Shown piece after piece: positions 25,671 to 44,895 of a stretch of DNA of 64,000 nucleotides. The notes beneath the pieces are model-generated. The model saw nothing but the letters and a program-made list of their open reading frames with translations, did not search any database and was not told the origin of the DNA. How positions within the stretch are numbered: position 1 is the first letter of the stretch; each line of letters starts with the position of its first letter. The position numbers were made by a program, and so were the translations under genes. The stretch covers positions 1 through 64,000 of the IMG/VR virus record IMGVR_UViG_3300032287_003113; one strand, given 5' to 3'.

Positions 25671-25744
25671 TGGTGCCCCTTGACAGAATCGAACTGCCAA
25701 TTGATGATTACAAATCAACTGTTATACCATTTAACTAAAGGGGC
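25671..25744 (-). tRNA. tRNA-Thr(UGU)
   Basis: Cloverleaf, loop TT-TGT-AA, GTTCGA, encoded CCA. Confidence 0.92.
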
Positions 25745-26300: not shown

Positions 26301-27287
26301 TTATGCTTTGATAATTCCGTCGATTAGGCCTGGATAGAAGAAGTCGCGATACTTGTCGTATAGCGGAGCAACAGCTTGTTTGAATTTATCTGTATCTTCT
26401 TTGTTTAGTTCTGTGTAAGTTACGCCAATGTCGCTGTGATCTTTTTTAGCAGCAAACGCTTCAGCTTCCTCAACTGACCACTTGCGTTCTAGGCGACTAG
26501 CGTATTTGCATGCTTCGCTAAACTTGGCTTGTTCATCTTCGCTTAATGTAGCTAAGAATTTGTTGCCAATAATAATACTAGTCAAGAACAAATTGTGTTT
26601 GGTGTTGACCATGTACCTCTTGCTTGTATTCTTGAACTGTGCTAGGTAACGTGGAATAGTTGTTTCGAGAGCATCGGCACCAATGCCTTCTTGTTTGAAA
26701 AAGTCTGGGTCAAGATATAGATCTCGCATTGAAAAAACTTGCGGAATAGCACCAATGGCTTCGCAAGTGTCAACAGTTACAGGATTATTTGTTGTGGCGA
26801 ACCCAATACCGCTTAGACTATCTAAATCGCTGATTGGTTTTTCGCTAACGATACAGCGGAATCCACCTGAATATGTAAACTCCATACCTATAGCTGGACT
26901 TTTGTCTTTTAGGCCGTCTAACATCTTACGACCAATTGGGCCTTCTAGTACACGTTTTGCATGATCGTGATCTTGGAAAATAAACGGCATTTCCAATGCC
27001 AAAAACTCCGGGCTATGCCAACGAGCTAAATCAACAACATGCATTTGACTCATTTGAATATCGCCGGAGTCAATTAACATCATTGGGTCAGCTTTAAAAT
27101 ATAATGATGAATCTCTCATTTTTTTGTCAGGATATTTGTTGCTGTATTCTTTTAAAGTAAAAATTTCTACTTCAAATTTGCCGTCGGTTAATTCGGCAAT
27201 TTTTTCTTTAAATGCTTCGGCTGTGCGTAGGAACAAATTTATAGGTTCGTGTGCGATTAACCAGGTGATTTTTTTCTTTTGATTCAT
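26301..27287 (-). CDS. TRAP DctP-family solute-binding protein without signal peptide
   Basis: F.E.I.ELTDGKFEVEIF, GDIQM, LEMPFIFQD.DHA, GGFR. Confidence 0.8.
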   Translation of the reverse strand: MNQKKKITWLIAHEPINLFLRTAEAFKEKIAELTDGKFEVEIFTLKEYSNKYPDKKMRDSSLYFKADPMMLIDSGDIQMSQMHVVDLARWHSPEFLALEMPFIFQDHDHAKRVLEGPIGRKMLDGLKDKSPAIGMEFTYSGGFRCIVSEKPISDLDSLSGIGFATTNNPVTVDTCEAIGAIPQVFSMRDLYLDPDFFKQEGIGADALETTIPRYLAQFKNTSKRYMVNTKHNLFLTSIIIGNKFLATLSEDEQAKFSEACKYASRLERKWSVEEAEAFAAKKDHSDIGVTYTELNKEDTDKFKQAVAPLYDKYRDFFYPGLIDGIIKA

Positions 27288-27340
27288 GGGATTCTCCAAT
27301 AGGATTTTGTATTATATATTTATACTTGCGCCTAGGATTC

Positions 27341-27632: not shown

Positions 27633-28008
27633 CCCAGCCCTGTCCGGAAATTGCATGGAACCAGGGATAAAATGAGCTGGGGATATCAAACTGCCATGTA
27701 CCTTCCTGATCAATCCATGCTGTTGGTGGCTGTGCCAAATGTTGATATCGTGGTAATACTTCTGTGCCGTTTACCGTTAATAGTTTGATCTCCACTGCAC
27801 CGCCGTTTGCGTCTACCACTGTACATTTTAAGTTTATAGGGCTAAACAAATCTATACTATAGTTAGTGTCTAGGTCCGTTATCAAATGTCCATTGAGACG
27901 CATACGATAATGTATGTTGCCGTGGGCAACTATGACCAATCGTACTTGCAATTGATCCGAGGTTTTAATATCCAATACGTCGGAGAAAGTGTTTATATCT
28001 TGGTGCAT
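27625..28008 (-). CDS. Hypothetical protein
   Basis: 127 aa; ends FYPWFHAISGQGW; overlaps the radical SAM gene. Confidence 0.55.
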   Translation of the reverse strand: MHQDINTFSDVLDIKTSDQLQVRLVIVAHGNIHYRMRLNGHLITDLDTNYSIDLFSPINLKCTVVDANGGAVEIKLLTVNGTEVLPRYQHLAQPPTAWIDQEGTWQFDIPSSFYPWFHAISGQGWVA

Positions 28009-29260
28009 AATCTAGTATCGTGTTGTTCCTGATTGTTTCAAAACTTTTTAAGAAACTGACTAATTCTTTCAGTGATTCCTCTGCATCTGCAGGCGGGGTG
28101 TATGTTTTAACAAACTCCAGGTACTCAGTGGCCAACTGTGCAATAATCTCGTGACTTAAATCACTTCTGCGAGTATTCACTTGCGGAGTATACGATCCTA
28201 ATCGATCAACCACAGCCTGTAACTTTGCAACGGTTTCTTGTCTGATATCGTCTGGCATCAGTTCCATACGCAAACAACGTGGTTGGTGCAATATGTTACA
28301 GCTCTCGGCGATAATGTTGTGTTCGATCATGAACTCAAAAACTTGGTCCAGTTCGCTGATAGTAAACAAGTTAGGAGTGATACGTAGTTCTAGTTTTAAT
28401 CCGGGATTACGATCACGCAAGGCCACAAACTTGAGAATGTTTGCCAAGATCTGATCAGTAGGTCCTGGATAACGCACATAATCGTTTAATGACGTAACTG
28501 ACTCTATACTGATACCTAGATGAAACTCTTGGAATCTAGGTATCAATTGTTCTATACGTTCATCGTATATTGTGCCGTTGGTAGTTGTGCCAACTATTAG
28601 ATCTTGTCCATCCAAGTGCTCGCAAATGTCGTAGAAGGCTTGATTATATAATGTTTCTCCACCCAGGAAGTGTATGTAACGTATGTATGGAAACGATTTT
28701 AACTCTGCAACAAAGCGATTGACTGTTGCTGAATCTTCAGTCCAAGACTGATACGGCTTGGGTTCAGCAAATAATCGACTATCCAGCTTGTTTAATTTTT
28801 TATAGTCTGCAACAAGACGTGAGCTTGCTGTGGGGTCGCACATGATACAGGCACTATTACAAGTATTACCTAGGTCTATTTGTAAATCTGTTGGAAAATG
28901 TGGGCTGGCACCCGCATGACTGTTGCTGTATTCAAATACAGGCAAGTGTGGGCTAGAACGAAAGGTTAATGGAAACTCTGCAAGACCAATAGCACTTTTG
29001 TTTAGTTGTCTAACACGACCCGAAAGTTTTCCAAACTGATCTTGGTAGTAACAAGGCTCACACTCTTTGGGTTTGTTGCCGGCTAATAGTTGTTGACGCA
29101 GGTCTCTCATGGGCCCACTGTTGTAAAAATCCATCAGCGAAGTTGTGCGTATGTTGAAGTCGGTAGCACCGTTTTTGCTCCAGCGACACACATCATAACT
29201 ACCATCGTAAGTTAATCTAATGTGGAACCAGGGACTTGAACAGAATGTGTTTTTTAACAT
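27965..29260 (-). CDS. Radical SAM protein with N-terminal twitch-like domain
   Basis: FCSSPW...C...CEPC; CNSACIMC; LGGETL. Confidence 0.88.
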   Translation of the reverse strand: MLKNTFCSSPWFHIRLTYDGSYDVCRWSKNGATDFNIRTTSLMDFYNSGPMRDLRQQLLAGNKPKECEPCYYQDQFGKLSGRVRQLNKSAIGLAEFPLTFRSSPHLPVFEYSNSHAGASPHFPTDLQIDLGNTCNSACIMCDPTASSRLVADYKKLNKLDSRLFAEPKPYQSWTEDSATVNRFVAELKSFPYIRYIHFLGGETLYNQAFYDICEHLDGQDLIVGTTTNGTIYDERIEQLIPRFQEFHLGISIESVTSLNDYVRYPGPTDQILANILKFVALRDRNPGLKLELRITPNLFTISELDQVFEFMIEHNIIAESCNILHQPRCLRMELMPDDIRQETVAKLQAVVDRLGSYTPQVNTRRSDLSHEIIAQLATEYLEFVKTYTPPADAEESLKELVSFLKSFETIRNNTILDYAPRYKHFLRRIGY

Positions 29261-29265
29261 ATATT

Positions 29266-29355
29266 TGGCGGAGAGTCAGGGATTCGAACCCTGGATAATA
29301 TTGCTACTATGCCGGTTTAGTAGACCGGTGCCTTCAGCCGCTCGGCCAACTCTCC
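29266..29355 (-). tRNA. tRNA-Ser(ACU), unusual A34 anticodon
   Basis: Long variable arm, G73, CCGGT-CTACTAA-ACCGG, CCA end. Confidence 0.9.
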
Positions 29356-29382
29356 ATAAATACTTTTTTATAAAGGCAAAAC

Positions 29383-29658
29383 ATGAAAAAATTAATATTT
29401 CTATTGGCAACATTCTTTTATGTTTCTGCCATGGCTTTTACTACTCAAAAACCTGTTGACTGTTTTGGAACACCTGAAGTTACCAAAATGCTACGAGAAG
29501 AATTCAACGAAGTCATCATATTTGACAGTATCAACAACCTGACCGGCAAAAGCAGAATTTCTTTGTTTGTAAATTCTAAAACTGGAACATGGACCTTGGT
29601 TGAATACGACAACGACAATGCCTGCATTTTAGGTGCTGGTCAAAGTCGTTCCACCTGA
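29383..29658 (+). CDS. Small secreted protein
   Basis: Signal peptide, two Cys, TGTWTLVE...ACIL. Confidence 0.65.
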   Translation: MKKLIFLLATFFYVSAMAFTTQKPVDCFGTPEVTKMLREEFNEVIIFDSINNLTGKSRISLFVNSKTGTWTLVEYDNDNACILGAGQSRST

Positions 29659-30080
29659 CTGACTTCCACGCCCGACTTAGTTAAAAAATCAACGCCGGTG
29701 GTATCTCTGTAGGCTGTGCCAAACCACACCCGAGCTATACCACTTTGATATATCAGTTTGGCACAGTCTAAGCAAGGGCTGTGAGTAACAAATAGATCAG
29801 CACCATGCCCAGACTCATTGCTACGTGCCAGTTTTGCGATAGCATTTGTTTCAGCATGGAGAACTTCTGGTTTGGTTTTAAGTTCATGATGTCCATCCTC
29901 TCTAAGTTCTATTATTTCTTCGCAGTCATTGTCCCAACCGGCGGGCATGCCATTATAACCAATACTGATGATCCTATCATCCTTGACCACAATAGCACCC
30001 ACATGCAATCTACGAGCGTGACTGAGTTCAGCAAATGTTCTTGCTGTTTGCATGTAGGCTTGTACTAACTTGTCTTTCAT
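29640..30080 (-). CDS. dCMP deaminase (ComEB-like)
   Basis: VGAIVV, SIGYNG, HAETNAI, SPCLDC. Confidence 0.88.
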   Translation of the reverse strand: MKDKLVQAYMQTARTFAELSHARRLHVGAIVVKDDRIISIGYNGMPAGWDNDCEEIIELREDGHHELKTKPEVLHAETNAIAKLARSNESGHGADLFVTHSPCLDCAKLIYQSGIARVWFGTAYRDTTGVDFLTKSGVEVSQVERL

Positions 30081-30295
30081 TTTACCTTGGCCAGATAATC
30101 GACTACATTTAAGTGGCCTTTTTGTGCTTCCAACAATGCGTCCACTGCTGTGACATGAGCTCCGGATTCTCTAGCACGGATTTTAAGTTCACGCACCCGC
30201 TGGGCGGCTGCAACAACTAGGTCAAACCGGCCAACACCTGTTTTGTCAATACATTTTTCAACATCTACTTCTGATGCACGAGTTTCTTTTCTCAT
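30077..30295 (-). CDS. rpoZ: RNA polymerase omega subunit-like protein
   Basis: VEKC...GRFDLVVAAAQRVREL...VDALLE. Confidence 0.7.
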   Translation of the reverse strand: MRKETRASEVDVEKCIDKTGVGRFDLVVAAAQRVRELKIRARESGAHVTAVDALLEAQKGHLNVVDYLAKVK

Positions 30296-38363: not shown

Positions 38364-38439
38364 TGGTGCCCTGGGTAGGATTCGAACCCACAATGTCCGC
38401 TCGGTAAAGCGGTGACTATACCATTTTGTCTACCAGGGT
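38364..38439 (-). tRNA. Non-canonical tRNA (6-nt anticodon loop, identity uncertain)
   Basis: T-arm GTGGGTTCGAATCCTAC, CCA end, anticodon arm CCGCT-TTACCG-AGCGG, A1:C72 mismatch. Confidence 0.7.
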
Positions 38440-38441
38440 GT

Positions 38442-38516
38442 TGGTTGCGGGGGACAGATTCGAACTGTCGATCTCCAGGTTATGAGCCTGACGGGTTGCC
38501 TCTTCCCTACCCCGCG
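38442..38516 (-). tRNA. tRNA-Met(CAU), initiator-like
   Basis: CGCGGGG 5' end, C1:A72 mismatch, CT-CAT-AA loop. Confidence 0.88.
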
Positions 38517-38521
38517 ATAAA

Positions 38522-39124
38522 CTACATTGCAGGACCGTTGCCGTTCCTAAATCCTATTTCACCGCCTTCAGCTTCGATACGCTTGACGACATCTTCGAAC
38601 AAGATAGGTGCAAAATCAGTTTGTTCCACACACACGCAATGATAACGGACATCAATCCATTGCCTTACTCCGCGGGTCATAAACTCGTGTGTGGTTTGTG
38701 CTGTTTTCATCACACGATTGGCGTGAGTGTGTCCGTGGATGTTGACACCAAAACGACCCAGGCTTTCCTCATGGATAGGGATATGACTGAGTATCATTCC
38801 GTTCATCACATGGTAAGCACGAAGCTCACGGAAGTGTTCACGATAGTCGGTGTCCTTGAAGATATCGTGGTTACCGCGGATAAGAACCTTGTCTCCGTTG
38901 AGCCTACGCATGATAGCAAGACTCTTGCGGCTCATAACAACATCGCCCAAGTGATACACTTTGTCGTTGGGCCTTACACGCTCGTTCCAGGCTGCGACCA
39001 TGAACTCGTCCATTTCCGCTGGATCGGTCCAAGGACGTAGTTTGGTCACACCATCGTTGCGTGTGAAGCGACATACACCTGCGTGTCCAAAATGCGTGTC
39101 GCTGACTAAAAATACTGCTGGCAT
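38522..39124 (-). CDS. Calcineurin-like metallophosphoesterase
   Basis: SDTHFGH, HLGD, GNHD, HGHTH. Confidence 0.9.
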   Translation of the reverse strand: MPAVFLVSDTHFGHAGVCRFTRNDGVTKLRPWTDPAEMDEFMVAAWNERVRPNDKVYHLGDVVMSRKSLAIMRRLNGDKVLIRGNHDIFKDTDYREHFRELRAYHVMNGMILSHIPIHEESLGRFGVNIHGHTHANRVMKTAQTTHEFMTRGVRQWIDVRYHCVCVEQTDFAPILFEDVVKRIEAEGGEIGFRNGNGPAM

Positions 39125-39147
39125 ACGTGCTTCCTTTCTTTAAAATT

Positions 39148-39225
39148 TGGAAGTGAGGGTCGGATTTGAACCGACGGTTTTAGGGATTTGCAGTCCCTTG
39201 CATTGGGCCACTCTGCCACCTCACT
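39148..39225 (-). tRNA. tRNA-Cys(GCA)
   Basis: AGGGA-CTGCAAA-TCCCT, U73, CCA. Confidence 0.92.
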
Positions 39226-39233
39226 ACTGTTAC

Positions 39234-39307
39234 TGGAGCGGGATATCGGAATCGAACCGATGACGAAAGATTGGAAATCTTTAGTTTTGCCCCTAAACTA
39301 ATCCCGC
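39234..39307 (-). tRNA. tRNA-Gly(UCC)
   Basis: AAAGA-TTTCCAA-TCTTT, U73, CCA. Confidence 0.92.
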
Positions 39308-39322
39308 TTAGGATTTACCACT

Positions 39323-39396
39323 TGGCGGGTCGCAAAGGAATCGAACCTCTACCCGCGGTTTTGGAGACCGCTGTTCTGCCACTAAACTAGCAACCC
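39323..39396 (-). tRNA. tRNA-Trp(CCA)
   Basis: GCGGT-CTCCAAA-ACCGC, G73, CCA. Confidence 0.92.
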
Positions 39397-39403
39397 ATAA
39401 TAC

Positions 39404-39479
39404 TGGCGCTCCCGACCGGATTCGAACCGGTGTACTCGCCGTGAAAGGGCGATGTCCTAGGCCTCTAGACGACGGGAGC
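39404..39479 (-). tRNA. tRNA-Glu(UUC)
   Basis: TCGCC-CTTTCAC-GGCGA, CCA. Confidence 0.92.
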
Positions 39480-39485
39480 CTAACT

Positions 39486-39569
39486 TGGTGGAGAATACTG
39501 GGATCGAACCAGTCGTGCCATAGGCGCCGGATTTACAGTCCAGTGCATCACCATTGATGCTTCTTCTCC
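39486..39569 (-). tRNA. tRNA-Tyr(GUA)
   Basis: CTGGA-CTGTAAA-TCCGG, long variable arm, CCA. Confidence 0.92.
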
Positions 39570-39575
39570 AAAACT

Positions 39576-39652
39576 TGGCGGAGTAGACGGGACTCGAACC
39601 CGCGACCCTCGGCGTGACAGGCCGATATTCTAACCAACTGAACTACCACTCC
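39576..39652 (-). tRNA. tRNA-Asp(GUC)
   Basis: TCGGC-CTGTCAC-GCCGA, CCA. Confidence 0.93.
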
Positions 39653-44727: not shown

Positions 44728-44812
44728 TGGTGCCCCAAGCGAGACTTGAACTCGCACACCTTGCGGTACCGGCTTCTAAGACCGGCGTGTCTGCCAATTC
44801 CACCATCGGGGC
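44728..44812 (-). tRNA. tRNA-Leu(UAG)
   Basis: CCGGT-CTTAGAA-GCCGG, long variable arm, CCA. Confidence 0.92.
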
Positions 44813-44817
44813 ATGTT

Positions 44818-44895
<78 letters not shown>

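What the first reader, a model, noticed from the sequence alone, without database searches (positions are those of the whole stretch)
29266..30080. tRNA-Ser with ACU anticodon (A34) near a deaminase gene
Seen: an intact long-arm Ser tRNA with loop CU-ACU-AA. Known: bacteria normally read AGY codons with tRNA-Ser(GCU), and A34 is largely confined to tRNA-Arg(ICG) made by TadA. Inference: it may favour AGU codons or escape host anticodon nucleases. The zinc deaminase ~300 bp away looks like a dCMP deaminase, so a role in A34-to-I editing is speculative.
Basis: partly seen in the sequence, partly recalled or inferred. Interest (0 to 1): 0.62.

Follow-up and report, generated by a model that had tools for sequence, protein, structure and literature searches.

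The report
Phage serine tRNA with ACU anticodon
A large freshwater phage carries an intact serine tRNA whose anticodon begins with A, a kind that reviews call missing from all life; dozens of related phages, a few cultured phages and mobile islands of Polynucleobacter keep the same tRNA, most likely as a dedicated reader of the serine codon AGU.

Summary
Window 29266-29355 (minus strand) is a well-formed long-arm tRNA-Ser with anticodon loop CU-ACU-AA. A34 is plus-strand base 29321.

A34 is neither an error nor a private mutation:
- Independent metagenome assemblies from two other studies show the same base.
- 53 IMG/VR contigs carry Ser(ACU) tRNAs, mostly relatives of this roughly 357-kb freshwater phage. 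So do six cultured enterobacterial jumbo phages (7t3 group), five Rhizobium phages and mobile islands in seven Polynucleobacter species.
- Across 29 distinct copies, 24 of 26 stem pairs show compensatory changes.
- A34 arose at least three times.

AGU is the phage's commonest serine codon (23 per 1000 codons, 37% of Ser). Published E. coli data show that an ACU anticodon in this same loop context stays unmodified and reads AGU almost exclusively. My best reading is therefore a genuine A34, AGU-specific serine tRNA. SerRS ignores the anticodon, which would make this change possible.

The neighbouring deaminase is a dCMP deaminase (1e-36 to the cyanophage S-TIM5 structure), not TadA. Inosine would make AGA (Arg) codons read as Ser, and these phages do not avoid AGA.

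The modification state and charging of the tRNA remain untested.

The parts
29266..29355 (-). tRNA-Ser(ACU), type II, encoded CCA, G73
   Evidence: ARAGORN; Rfam RF00005 56.2 bits; cloverleaf supported by covariation in 29 distinct homologues
29319..29321 (-). Anticodon ACU. A34 is plus-strand base 29321, C35 is 29320 and U36 is 29319. The loop C32-A38 spans 29317-29323.
   Evidence: Sequence read directly. No variant at 29321 in independent contigs X3 and X5, nor in one RNA-library contig, X19.
29640..30080 (-). dCMP deaminase (146 aa). It is a neighbour of the tRNA, not a functional partner.
   Evidence: PF00383 81.7 bits. PHROG 174 dCMP deaminase, 3e-52. PDB 4p9c (S-TIM5 dCMP deaminase), 1e-36 over the full length. 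TadA chains match only at 3e-5, on the zinc motif. TadA equivalog 34.3 bits against a 150-bit cut-off.
27965..29260 (-). Radical SAM protein (431 aa) that starts 5 nt after the tRNA 3' end. It is context only.
   Evidence: PF04055 and a SPASM-like motif; PHROG 14086
29383..29658 (+). 91-aa ORF with a signal-peptide-like N-terminus, divergent from the tRNA. It is context only.
   Evidence: only a weak PHROG hit
25671..25744 (-). tRNA-Thr(UGU), part of the phage's 12-tRNA set
38364..39652 (-). tRNA cluster: an odd tRNA with a 6-nt loop, Met, Cys(GCA), Gly(UCC), Trp, Glu(UUC), Tyr(GUA) and Asp(GUC)
44728..44895 (-). tRNA-Leu(UAG) and a second tRNA-Met(CAU)

Best explanation
This is a functional, phage-encoded serine tRNA with a genuine, unmodified adenosine at wobble position 34. 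It is charged by the host SerRS, which recognises the long variable arm, G73 and the acceptor stem but not the anticodon. It reads AGU by a full Watson-Crick match, reads AGC hardly at all, and does not read AGA. AGU is the phage's most used serine codon, and in the cell it is otherwise served only by G:U wobble from a single tRNA-Ser(GCU). The tRNA therefore supplements AGU decoding.

Why Ser in particular: AGY is the only two-codon NNY box whose synthetase ignores the anticodon, so a G34-to-A34 change costs nothing in charging. That would explain why ACU, alone among the 'forbidden' split-box ANN anticodons, recurs in phages and mobile elements.

Shown here: the gene, its conservation, covariation, recurrence, codon usage, and the identity of the neighbouring genes.

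Inferred: charging, the unmodified state of A34, the decoding range, and the fitness benefit.
For: (1) The tRNA is intact.

(2) A34 is real.
- It is present in independent assemblies from other studies.
- 53 IMG/VR contigs hold this type; ARAGORN of them Ser(act), with 27 distinct sequences. 39 of the 53 share flanking similarity with this phage.
- It occurs in cultured phages: Salmonella phage 7t3 and five others at 97.8-100% identity, and Rhizobium phage RHph_TM2_3B, annotated 'tRNA-Ser(act)', with four siblings.
- A scan of 185,579 species genomes gave 13 Ser(ACU) genes. Almost all are in Polynucleobacter or related betaproteobacteria, beside TraG, P63C and HNH genes.

(3) Selection for function. 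Among 29 distinct copies, 99.1% of stem cells pair, and 24 of 26 pairs have double compensatory changes. No shuffle out of 500 reached this.

(4) Recurrence. With base 34 masked, the A34 label needs 6 changes on the tree, at least 3 of them forced by well-supported branches, against about 25 for shuffled labels.

(5) Codon demand (per 1000 codons).
- This phage: AGT 23.3, which is 37% of Ser and the top Ser codon. AGY makes up 61% of Ser.
- Polynucleobacter core genes: AGT about 12, with AGY 31-35% of Ser.
- The independent carriers are also AGU-rich: 7t3 has AGT 21.5 against AGC 4.1, and the Rhizobium phage has 17.0 against 4.2.

(6) tRNA sets. The complete 356,865-nt relative G006 has the same 12 tRNAs. 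G006, 7t3 and the Rhizobium phage all carry Ser(ACU) without Ser(GCU). Relative L003 carries GCU, UGA and ACU together, so ACU is an addition and not merely a replacement.

(7) Published experiment (PMC11066159). An orthogonal tRNA with the ACU anticodon in the same CU-NNN-AA loop, tested in E. coli, decoded AGU at 9.4%. AGC and AGA were below detection and AGG was 0.36%. No inosine was seen in cDNA.

(8) No AGA avoidance, which argues against I34. AGA is 9.2 per 1000 here and 16.2 in the Rhizobium phage, which even encodes tRNA-Arg(UCU).
Against: - There are no direct data on charging, modification or decoding of this tRNA.
- The only RNA-library contig over the anticodon (X19, 29315-29465, depth 2) shows A. 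It looks like a precursor or carried-over DNA, so it says little about the mature tRNA.
- The host is unknown. Polynucleobacter is suggested only by near-identical ACU tRNAs and by habitat. The phage DctP is just 26% identical to Polynucleobacter proteins.
- AGT/(AGT+AGC) is 0.60, about the same as the phage's general T-over-C preference of 0.58.
- Relatives that carry Ser(GCU) instead (L063, L067, L076, L096) are just as AGU-rich. ACU is therefore one of two workable solutions and is not required.
- The invariance of the loop CUACUAA is partly built into my search patterns. Only the BLAST-found cultured phages are free of that bias.
Confidence: 0.68

Rival explanations
1. A34 is deaminated to inosine by the host TadA or by a phage enzyme. 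The tRNA would then read AGU and AGC (and AGA) as a single broad AGY decoder.
For: - The loop CU-ACU-AA differs from the TadA substrate tRNA-Arg(ACG) loop only at position 36.
- Outside the window, the genome encodes a second, divergent deaminase of the cytidine-deaminase (CDA) fold, with a basic C-terminal module and unknown substrate. It is conserved in this phage lineage.
- Relatives also carry a type-I tRNA with anticodon AAG.
- The complete relative, 7t3 and the Rhizobium phage have no Ser(GCU) of their own.
Against: - E. coli TadA left an ACU anticodon unmodified in this same loop context, and AGC was not read.
- I34 would also pair with AGA (Arg), yet AGA is common in all three carriers. 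One of them encodes tRNA-Arg(UCU).
- The adjacent deaminase is a dCMP deaminase.
- The fold of the second deaminase cannot be told apart from RibD, dCMP deaminase, TadA or cytosine deaminase.
- The one RNA-library contig shows A.
Confidence: 0.12
2. The tRNA is an anti-defence spare. It replaces the host tRNA-Ser(GCU) when that is cleaved or depleted during infection, and the A34 change makes it invisible to an anticodon nuclease.
For: - From my own knowledge, not checked here: phage tRNAs with altered anticodon loops are reported to evade tRNA-targeting toxins, and some VapC toxins cleave Ser tRNAs.
- ACU tRNAs sit on mobile islands and phages, the usual carriers of conflict systems.
- A34 arose repeatedly.
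Against: - No nuclease or defence gene was found next to it.
- A tRNA that reads only AGU could not replace GCU for AGC codons, which are 15.4 per 1000 here.
- Codon matching explains the data without extra assumptions.
Confidence: 0.1
3. It is a decaying or non-translational element: a pseudo-tRNA, a remnant of an integration site, or a processing signal.
For: - In Polynucleobacter some copies have hybrid acceptor stems typical of integration-site remnants (L176-L178).
- tRNA genes are common attachment sites.
Against: - All helices are kept by compensatory changes, and CCA, G73 and the tertiary-contact bases are conserved.
- The tRNA is retained in a complete 357-kb relative together with 11 other tRNAs.
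- No integrase lies nearby.
Confidence: 0.04
4. It is a sequencing or assembly error, or a private G-to-A mutation.
For: None found. One distant relative (L065) has a Ser(GCU) in the same neighbourhood.
Against: The same base appears in contigs of other studies, in 51 IMG/VR tRNAs, in cultured phages and in bacterial genomes.
Confidence: 0.01

Closest known systems
Canonical bacterial and phage tRNA-Ser(GCU)
   Same: Type II architecture, G73, G1-C72/G2-C71/A3-U70, a 3-bp D stem, C35-U36-A37 and an encoded CCA. It clusters with Ser(GCU) tRNAs in the tree.
   Different: Position 34 is A instead of G. The expected reading is AGU only, instead of AGC plus AGU by wobble. It is only 69-71% identical to the Polynucleobacter chromosomal Ser(GCU).
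tRNA-Arg(ACG) with TadA, the one regular bacterial A34 tRNA
   Same: A34 sits in the loop C32-U33-A34-C35-N36-A37-A38, which is identical except at position 36.
   Different: U36 replaces G36. E. coli TadA did not modify ACU. In a split box, I34 would misread AGA. No TadA is encoded here.
Natural unmodified A34 tRNAs, such as Mycoplasma tRNA-Thr(AGU) as cited in PMC11066159
   Same: A genuine adenosine at the wobble position is used in translation.
   Different: Those tRNAs sit in four-codon family boxes, where loose reading is harmless. This one sits in the Ser/Arg split box, where reviews say A34 is universally missing.
Engineered orthogonal tRNA with ACU anticodon (Schmitt, Tittle and Fisk 2024, PMC11066159)
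   Same: The same anticodon and the same loop sequence. It gives the only measured decoding profile: AGU 9.4%, AGC and AGA below detection, AGG 0.36%, no inosine.
   Different: It has an archaeal tRNA-Tyr body, is charged with Tyr and is artificial. The phage tRNA is natural, Ser-type and conserved.
Ser(ACU) genes already in public records
   Same: The same anticodon on a viral tRNA-Ser. Rhizobium phage RHph_TM2_3B is annotated 'tRNA-Ser(act)'. The Salmonella phage 7t3 group carries one. Chlorovirus ATCV-1 has one listed in a review table.
   Different: These are catalogue entries only. In six literature searches I found no paper that analyses them. The window's tRNA is 72-77% identical to the cultured ones.
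Codon-compensating tRNA sets of AT-rich phages
   Same: The set is dominated by U34 anticodons and matches the phage's preferred A/U-ending codons: ACA, GAA, AGU.
   Different: The usual solution for NNY boxes is G34. Here the Watson-Crick partner of the U-ending codon is used instead.

Membership tests
Bacterial-type tRNA-Ser (type II) | Cloverleaf with a 7-bp acceptor stem, 5-bp anticodon and T stems, conserved U8, A14, G18G19 and a TΨC loop | tested here: met
   ARAGORN drawing; Rfam 56.2 bits; invariant columns in A1
Bacterial-type tRNA-Ser (type II) | Long variable arm with a paired stem, G73 discriminator, G1-C72, G2-C71 and A3-U70 (SerRS identity set; established knowledge) | tested here: met
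   6-bp variable stem, G73, GGA...UCC acceptor. The variable stem is kept by compensatory changes in all 6 pairs.
Bacterial-type tRNA-Ser (type II) | Serylation by SerRS | not testable with these tools
   Needs an aminoacylation assay or charged-tRNA sequencing
TadA substrate tRNA (A34 to I34) | A34 in a 7-nt loop with U33 and C35 | tested here: met
   Loop CUACUAA
TadA substrate tRNA (A34 to I34) | G36 (anticodon ACG), the natural substrate of bacterial TadA | tested here: not met
   U36. Published: ACU in the same loop was not deaminated in E. coli.
TadA substrate tRNA (A34 to I34) | A-to-G signal at position 34 in RNA | tested here: inconclusive
   One RNA-library contig (X19, depth 2) shows A, but it extends 110 nt upstream of the tRNA and may be precursor or DNA
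TadA / tRNA adenosine deaminase (neighbour gene 29640-30080) | Score above the NCBIfam TadA equivalog cut-off (150 bits) | tested here: not met
   34.3 bits, residues 9-64 only; 23.9 bits in the genome search
dCMP deaminase (neighbour gene 29640-30080) | CDA-fold domain with HAE and PCxxC zinc motifs | tested here: met
   PF00383 81.7 bits; HAETNA and SPCLDC are visible in the translation
dCMP deaminase (neighbour gene 29640-30080) | Full-length similarity to enzymes with a solved structure and shown dCMP deaminase activity | tested here: met
   4p9c (cyanophage S-TIM5), 1e-36, residues 1-142; also 2hvv, 1vq2 (T4) and 2w4l (human); PHROG 174
dCMP deaminase (neighbour gene 29640-30080) | Catalytic activity on dCMP | not testable with these tools
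   Needs an enzyme assay
Codon-compensating phage tRNA | The anticodon matches a codon that the phage uses much more than its host does | tested here: inconclusive
   AGU is 23.3 per 1000 in the phage against about 12 in Polynucleobacter core genes, but the host assignment is only inferred. Relatives with GCU are equally AGU-rich.

The most novel reading that the evidence does not exclude
The lineage-specific CDA-fold deaminase encoded elsewhere in this genome (L215:790-1860, with 191 metagenomic homologues, nearly all from uncultured sequence and many on contigs of 150-357 kb) is a phage tRNA wobble-adenosine deaminase. It would act on the lineage's unusual A34 tRNAs, namely Ser(ACU) and the type-I AAG tRNA. 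The phage would then install its own inosine decoding, independent of the host TadA.
Probability: 0.06. Interest if true: 0.85.

Novelty: new variant of a known kind. Interest (0 to 1): 0.6.

Why it matters
Reviews state that ANN anticodons in split codon boxes, including Ser/Arg, are missing from all cells and from phages, and treat them as 'prohibited' (PMC8007984). Here a natural Ser(ACU) tRNA family is shown to be under purifying selection. It evolved more than once, and it sits on phages and mobile islands, including cultured phages of Salmonella, Klebsiella, Erwinia and Rhizobium.

That turns a long-standing question into a bench experiment with existing strains. The question is why unmodified A34 is avoided, and what it costs in misreading.

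It also offers a simple rule for where the ban can be broken: where the synthetase ignores the anticodon. And it supplies a natural, near-AGU-specific decoder that could interest people who reassign sense codons.

Tried and rejected
- **Alternative register of the anticodon loop (CUA amber suppressor).** Rejected: it would need a non-pairing stem.
- **Megablast of the region against cultured phages.** No match. No cultured phage is a close relative at the nucleotide level.
- **Literature.** Six searches for Ser(ACU), A34 and phage tRNA found no analysis of phage Ser(ACU), only a table entry for chlorovirus ATCV-1 and the engineered-tRNA study.
- **Host assignment through the phage DctP protein.** Only 25-26% identity to Polynucleobacter proteins, so no support.
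- **The adjacent deaminase as TadA.** Rejected.
- **Adjacency of the tRNA and the deaminase as a sign of functional coupling.** Rejected. The adjacency is kept only in close relatives (L013, L032, L037, L107). Elsewhere the ACU tRNA sits among other tRNAs.
- **Second deaminase.** The sequence, the AlphaFold model (pLDDT 77.6) and Foldseek could not assign a substrate class. A shared C-terminal module with the neighbouring DUF6321 protein was not found.
- **A34 against G34 codon-usage contrast.** Significant (p about 2e-5), but confounded by GC content and by relatedness. GCU-carrying relatives are equally AGU-rich, so I do not use it as proof.
- **Promoter and terminator scan.** It found nothing convincing for the tRNA.

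Full report
**Observation**

The window is the first 64 kb of a 219,879-nt IMG/VR virus record (42.6% GC, CheckV 51% complete). ARAGORN finds tRNA-Ser(act) at 29266-29355 on the minus strand. Rfam's tRNA model scores it 56.2 bits, E 2e-9.

The drawn structure has these features:
- a 7-bp Watson-Crick acceptor stem (GGAGAGU/ACUCUCC) and G73;
- a 3-bp D stem;
- the anticodon stem CCGGU/ACCGG with the 7-nt loop C-U-A-C-U-A-A;
- a 6-bp variable arm, a standard T arm and an encoded CCA.

A shifted register that would give a CUA anticodon does not pair. A34 is plus-strand base 29321. The zinc deaminase ORF lies at 29640-30080, 285 nt from the tRNA 5' end.

**Is A34 real?**

The stretch is held by 18 DNA runs from about seven studies, all labelled freshwater or plain 'metagenome'. 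I laid 2001 letters on four runs.
- Contigs from two studies other than the likely source span the anticodon: X3 record 13 (29252-29888) and X5 record 20 (29298-29537). Neither shows a difference at 29321.
- An RNA-library contig (X19, 29315-29465, depth 2) also shows A. It runs 110 nt upstream of the tRNA and could be precursor or DNA, so it says little about the mature tRNA.

**Relatives and distribution**

An exact-pattern scan of IMG/VR for this anticodon stem-loop with any base at 34 gave 14 A34 Ser tRNAs and only 2 G34. The 37 T hits are Arg(UCU).

A scan for the Ser D arm plus CU-A-CUAA found 53 contigs among 2.9 million. ARAGORN of them Ser(act), with 27 distinct sequences. 39 of the 53 share at least 200 nt of flanking similarity with this genome. 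The bulk is therefore one lineage of large freshwater phages.

One member, G006, is 356,865 nt and rated complete. It is 99.3% identical around the locus and has the same 12 tRNAs.

Outside this lineage:
- Six cultured jumbo phages share one Ser(ACU) gene at 97.8-100% identity: Salmonella 7t3, SE_PL, Munch and PHA46, Klebsiella fENko-Kae01 and Erwinia Hallingskeid. The related RaK2, PBECO4 and SD-2_S15 phages have GCU.
- Rhizobium phage RHph_TM2_3B carries one, already annotated 'tRNA-Ser(act)'. Four sibling phages gave the same BLAST match; I did not check their anticodons.
- A scan of one genome for each of 185,579 species gave only 15 hits, of which 13 are real Ser(ACU) genes. They lie in seven Polynucleobacter species, four betaproteobacterial or Burkholderiaceae MAGs and one Succinatimonas MAG.

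In Polynucleobacter these genes sit beside a T4SS coupling protein and P63C and HNH genes. They reach up to four copies per genome, and some copies have hybrid acceptor stems, as at integration sites. Each of the five genomes I checked also keeps a canonical Ser(GCU) that is only 69-71% identical. The P. brandtiae copy differs by four bases from the copy of a relative of this phage (L186 against L077). That makes Polynucleobacter, or a close freshwater relative, a plausible host. This is an inference only, because a DctP comparison gave no support.

**Selection**

I aligned 29 distinct Ser(ACU) genes, leaving out three with hybrid acceptor stems (L176-L178). On that alignment 99.1% of stem cells pair. 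24 of 26 pairs show changes on both sides. No shuffle out of 500, and no slid register, comes close.

The anticodon loop is invariant, but my patterns required it. The cultured phages, found by BLAST, are the unbiased cases, and they have the same loop.

I built a tree of 90 Ser(NCU) tRNAs with base 34 masked. On it A34 needs 6 changes, at least 3 of them forced by well-supported branches, against about 25 for shuffled labels. There is one main A34 clade of 24 rows, plus separate origins (the L069 group, L121, L180) nested among G34 tRNAs. Resolution is low for 90 columns, but more than one origin is likely.

Within the phage lineage both states occur:
- L065, a 70-75% relative, has Ser(GCU) in the same neighbourhood.
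- L003 has GCU, UGA and ACU together among 27 tRNAs.

**Codon usage**

All figures below are per 1000 codons.

| Genome | AGT | AGC | AGA | AGG |
|---|---|---|---|---|
| This phage (203 long ORFs for the RSCU values) | 23.3 (RSCU 2.21, 37% of Ser) | 15.4 | 9.2 | 1.5 |
| Polynucleobacter core genes (80 kb) | about 12 | 7-13 | 4-6 | 3-5 |
| Salmonella phage 7t3 (35.5% GC) | 21.5 | 4.1 | 6.8 | 1.7 |
| Rhizobium phage RHph_TM2_3B (41% GC) | 17.0 | 4.2 | 16.2 | 3.0 |

AGT is the phage's commonest serine codon, and AGY makes up 61% of Ser. In Polynucleobacter core genes AGY is 31-35% of Ser.

The tRNA sets of 7t3 and the Rhizobium phage contain Ser(UGA) and Ser(ACU) but no Ser(GCU). Otherwise they hold U34 anticodons, with G34 for the remaining two-codon boxes.

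There are limits to this argument. The AGT share of AGY (0.60) equals the phage's general T-over-C bias (0.58). GCU-carrying relatives are just as AGU-rich. ACU is therefore an alternative solution, not a necessity.

**Mechanism**

Schmitt, Tittle and Fisk (PMC11066159) tested 15 A34 anticodons on one tRNA body whose loop is CU-NNN-AA, as here.
- ACU read AGU at 9.4%. AGC and AGA were below detection and AGG was 0.36%.
- cDNA sequencing showed only A at position 34.
- E. coli TadA proved very specific for ACG.

Inosine in a Ser/Arg split box would also pair with AGA. None of the carriers avoids AGA, and one encodes tRNA-Arg(UCU).

I therefore take A34 to be unmodified and the tRNA to be a near-exclusive AGU reader. 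Its small AGG misreading would be cheap, because AGG is rare in these phages.

From established identity rules, SerRS does not read the anticodon, whereas the synthetases for Asn, Asp, Tyr, His, Cys, Phe and Ile do. This explains why Ser is the split-box amino acid where A34 can appear. This last step is inference.

**The deaminases**

The neighbour (146 aa) matches as follows:
- PF00383, and PHROG 174 'dCMP deaminase' at 3e-52;
- the solved cyanophage S-TIM5 dCMP deaminase (4p9c) at 1e-36 over its whole length;
- TadA chains only at about 3e-5, on the zinc motif, and the TadA equivalog at 34 bits against a cut-off of 150.

It adjoins the tRNA only in the closest relatives. I reject a link to A34.

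A second CDA-fold protein lies 190 kb away (L215:790-1860, 356 aa). It has a weak RibD-like domain with HAE and PC-x11-C motifs, and a conserved basic C-terminal module. It has 191 metagenomic homologues, many on 150-357-kb contigs. Its model (pLDDT 77.6) matches RibD, dCMP deaminase, TadA and cytosine deaminase about equally, with TM about 0.5. Its substrate is open, and it is the basis of the low-probability novel case.

**Comparison with what is known, and novelty**

A 2021 review states that A34 is universally missing in the Ser-Arg split box and that phage tRNAs lack the same genes as bacteria (PMC8007984). Public records do contain Ser(ACU) annotations: the Rhizobium phages, and chlorovirus ATCV-1 in a review table. 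I found no analysis of them.

The thing itself is an ordinary kind of element, a phage tRNA, with an anticodon class thought to be excluded. It is shown here to be conserved, recurrent and mobile. I rate it a new variant of a known kind, with interest 0.6.

**Verdict**

The decisive experiments are tRNA sequencing, charging assays and codon-reporter assays, and they can be done with cultured carriers.

Noticed in passing
window 38364-38439 (-): A tRNA-like gene with a 6-nt anticodon loop, or an 8-nt loop UUUACCGA if the last stem pair opens. Rfam scores it 41 bits. It is identical in L032. Its homologues in relatives (L069, L107, L113, L118) are 77-nt type-I tRNAs that ARAGORN reads as 'Leu'(AAG), three of the four with C33. 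This would be a second unusual A34 tRNA family in the lineage.
   Followed up: partly
L215:790-1860 (-), which is G000 218165-219235, outside the window: A 356-aa divergent CDA-fold deaminase (HAE, PC-x11-C) with a low-complexity insert and a conserved basic C-terminal module. It has 191 metagenomic homologues, some fused to ParB-like or GNAT domains. Its substrate class is not resolved by sequence or fold.
   Followed up: partly
window 29266-29310 against L013:975-1064 and L032: The flanks are 99.3% identical, yet the T stem of the tRNA (CAGGG/CCCUG against GUGAG/CUCAC) and its variable arm differ by several compensatory changes. This suggests allele exchange within the tRNA gene between co-occurring phages.
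   Followed up: no
window 30077-30295 (-): A 72-aa protein with a weak match to RNA polymerase Rpb6/omega (20.4 bits, below the 26-bit cut-off). It sits directly upstream of the dCMP deaminase.
   Followed up: no
window 26301-27299 (-): A TRAP-transporter solute-binding protein (DctP, 128.6 bits) encoded by a phage. It is only 25-26% identical to Polynucleobacter proteins.
   Followed up: partly
window 27965-29260 (-): A radical SAM protein with an N-terminal SPASM-like cysteine motif. It starts 5 nt after the tRNA 3' end, so it is probably co-transcribed with the tRNA. Its function is unknown.
   Followed up: no
L184, L185, L188, L190, L183 (Polynucleobacter genomes): Mini-clusters of Ser(ACU)-Gly(CCC)-Thr(CGU) occur at the borders of conjugative or phage-like islands, in up to four copies in one genome. 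L176-L178 have hybrid acceptor stems, which look like integration-site remnants.
   Followed up: partly
L003:2111-10912: A 201-kb relative packs 27 tRNA genes into 11 kb. They include three Ser isoacceptors (GCU, UGA, ACU) and Arg(ACG), which needs TadA.
   Followed up: no
window 39489-39569 (-): tRNA-Tyr(GUA) with a G.A mismatch at the base of the acceptor stem. ARAGORN misses it at default settings. Rfam finds it at 37.3 bits, and ARAGORN finds it with -ps90.
   Followed up: no
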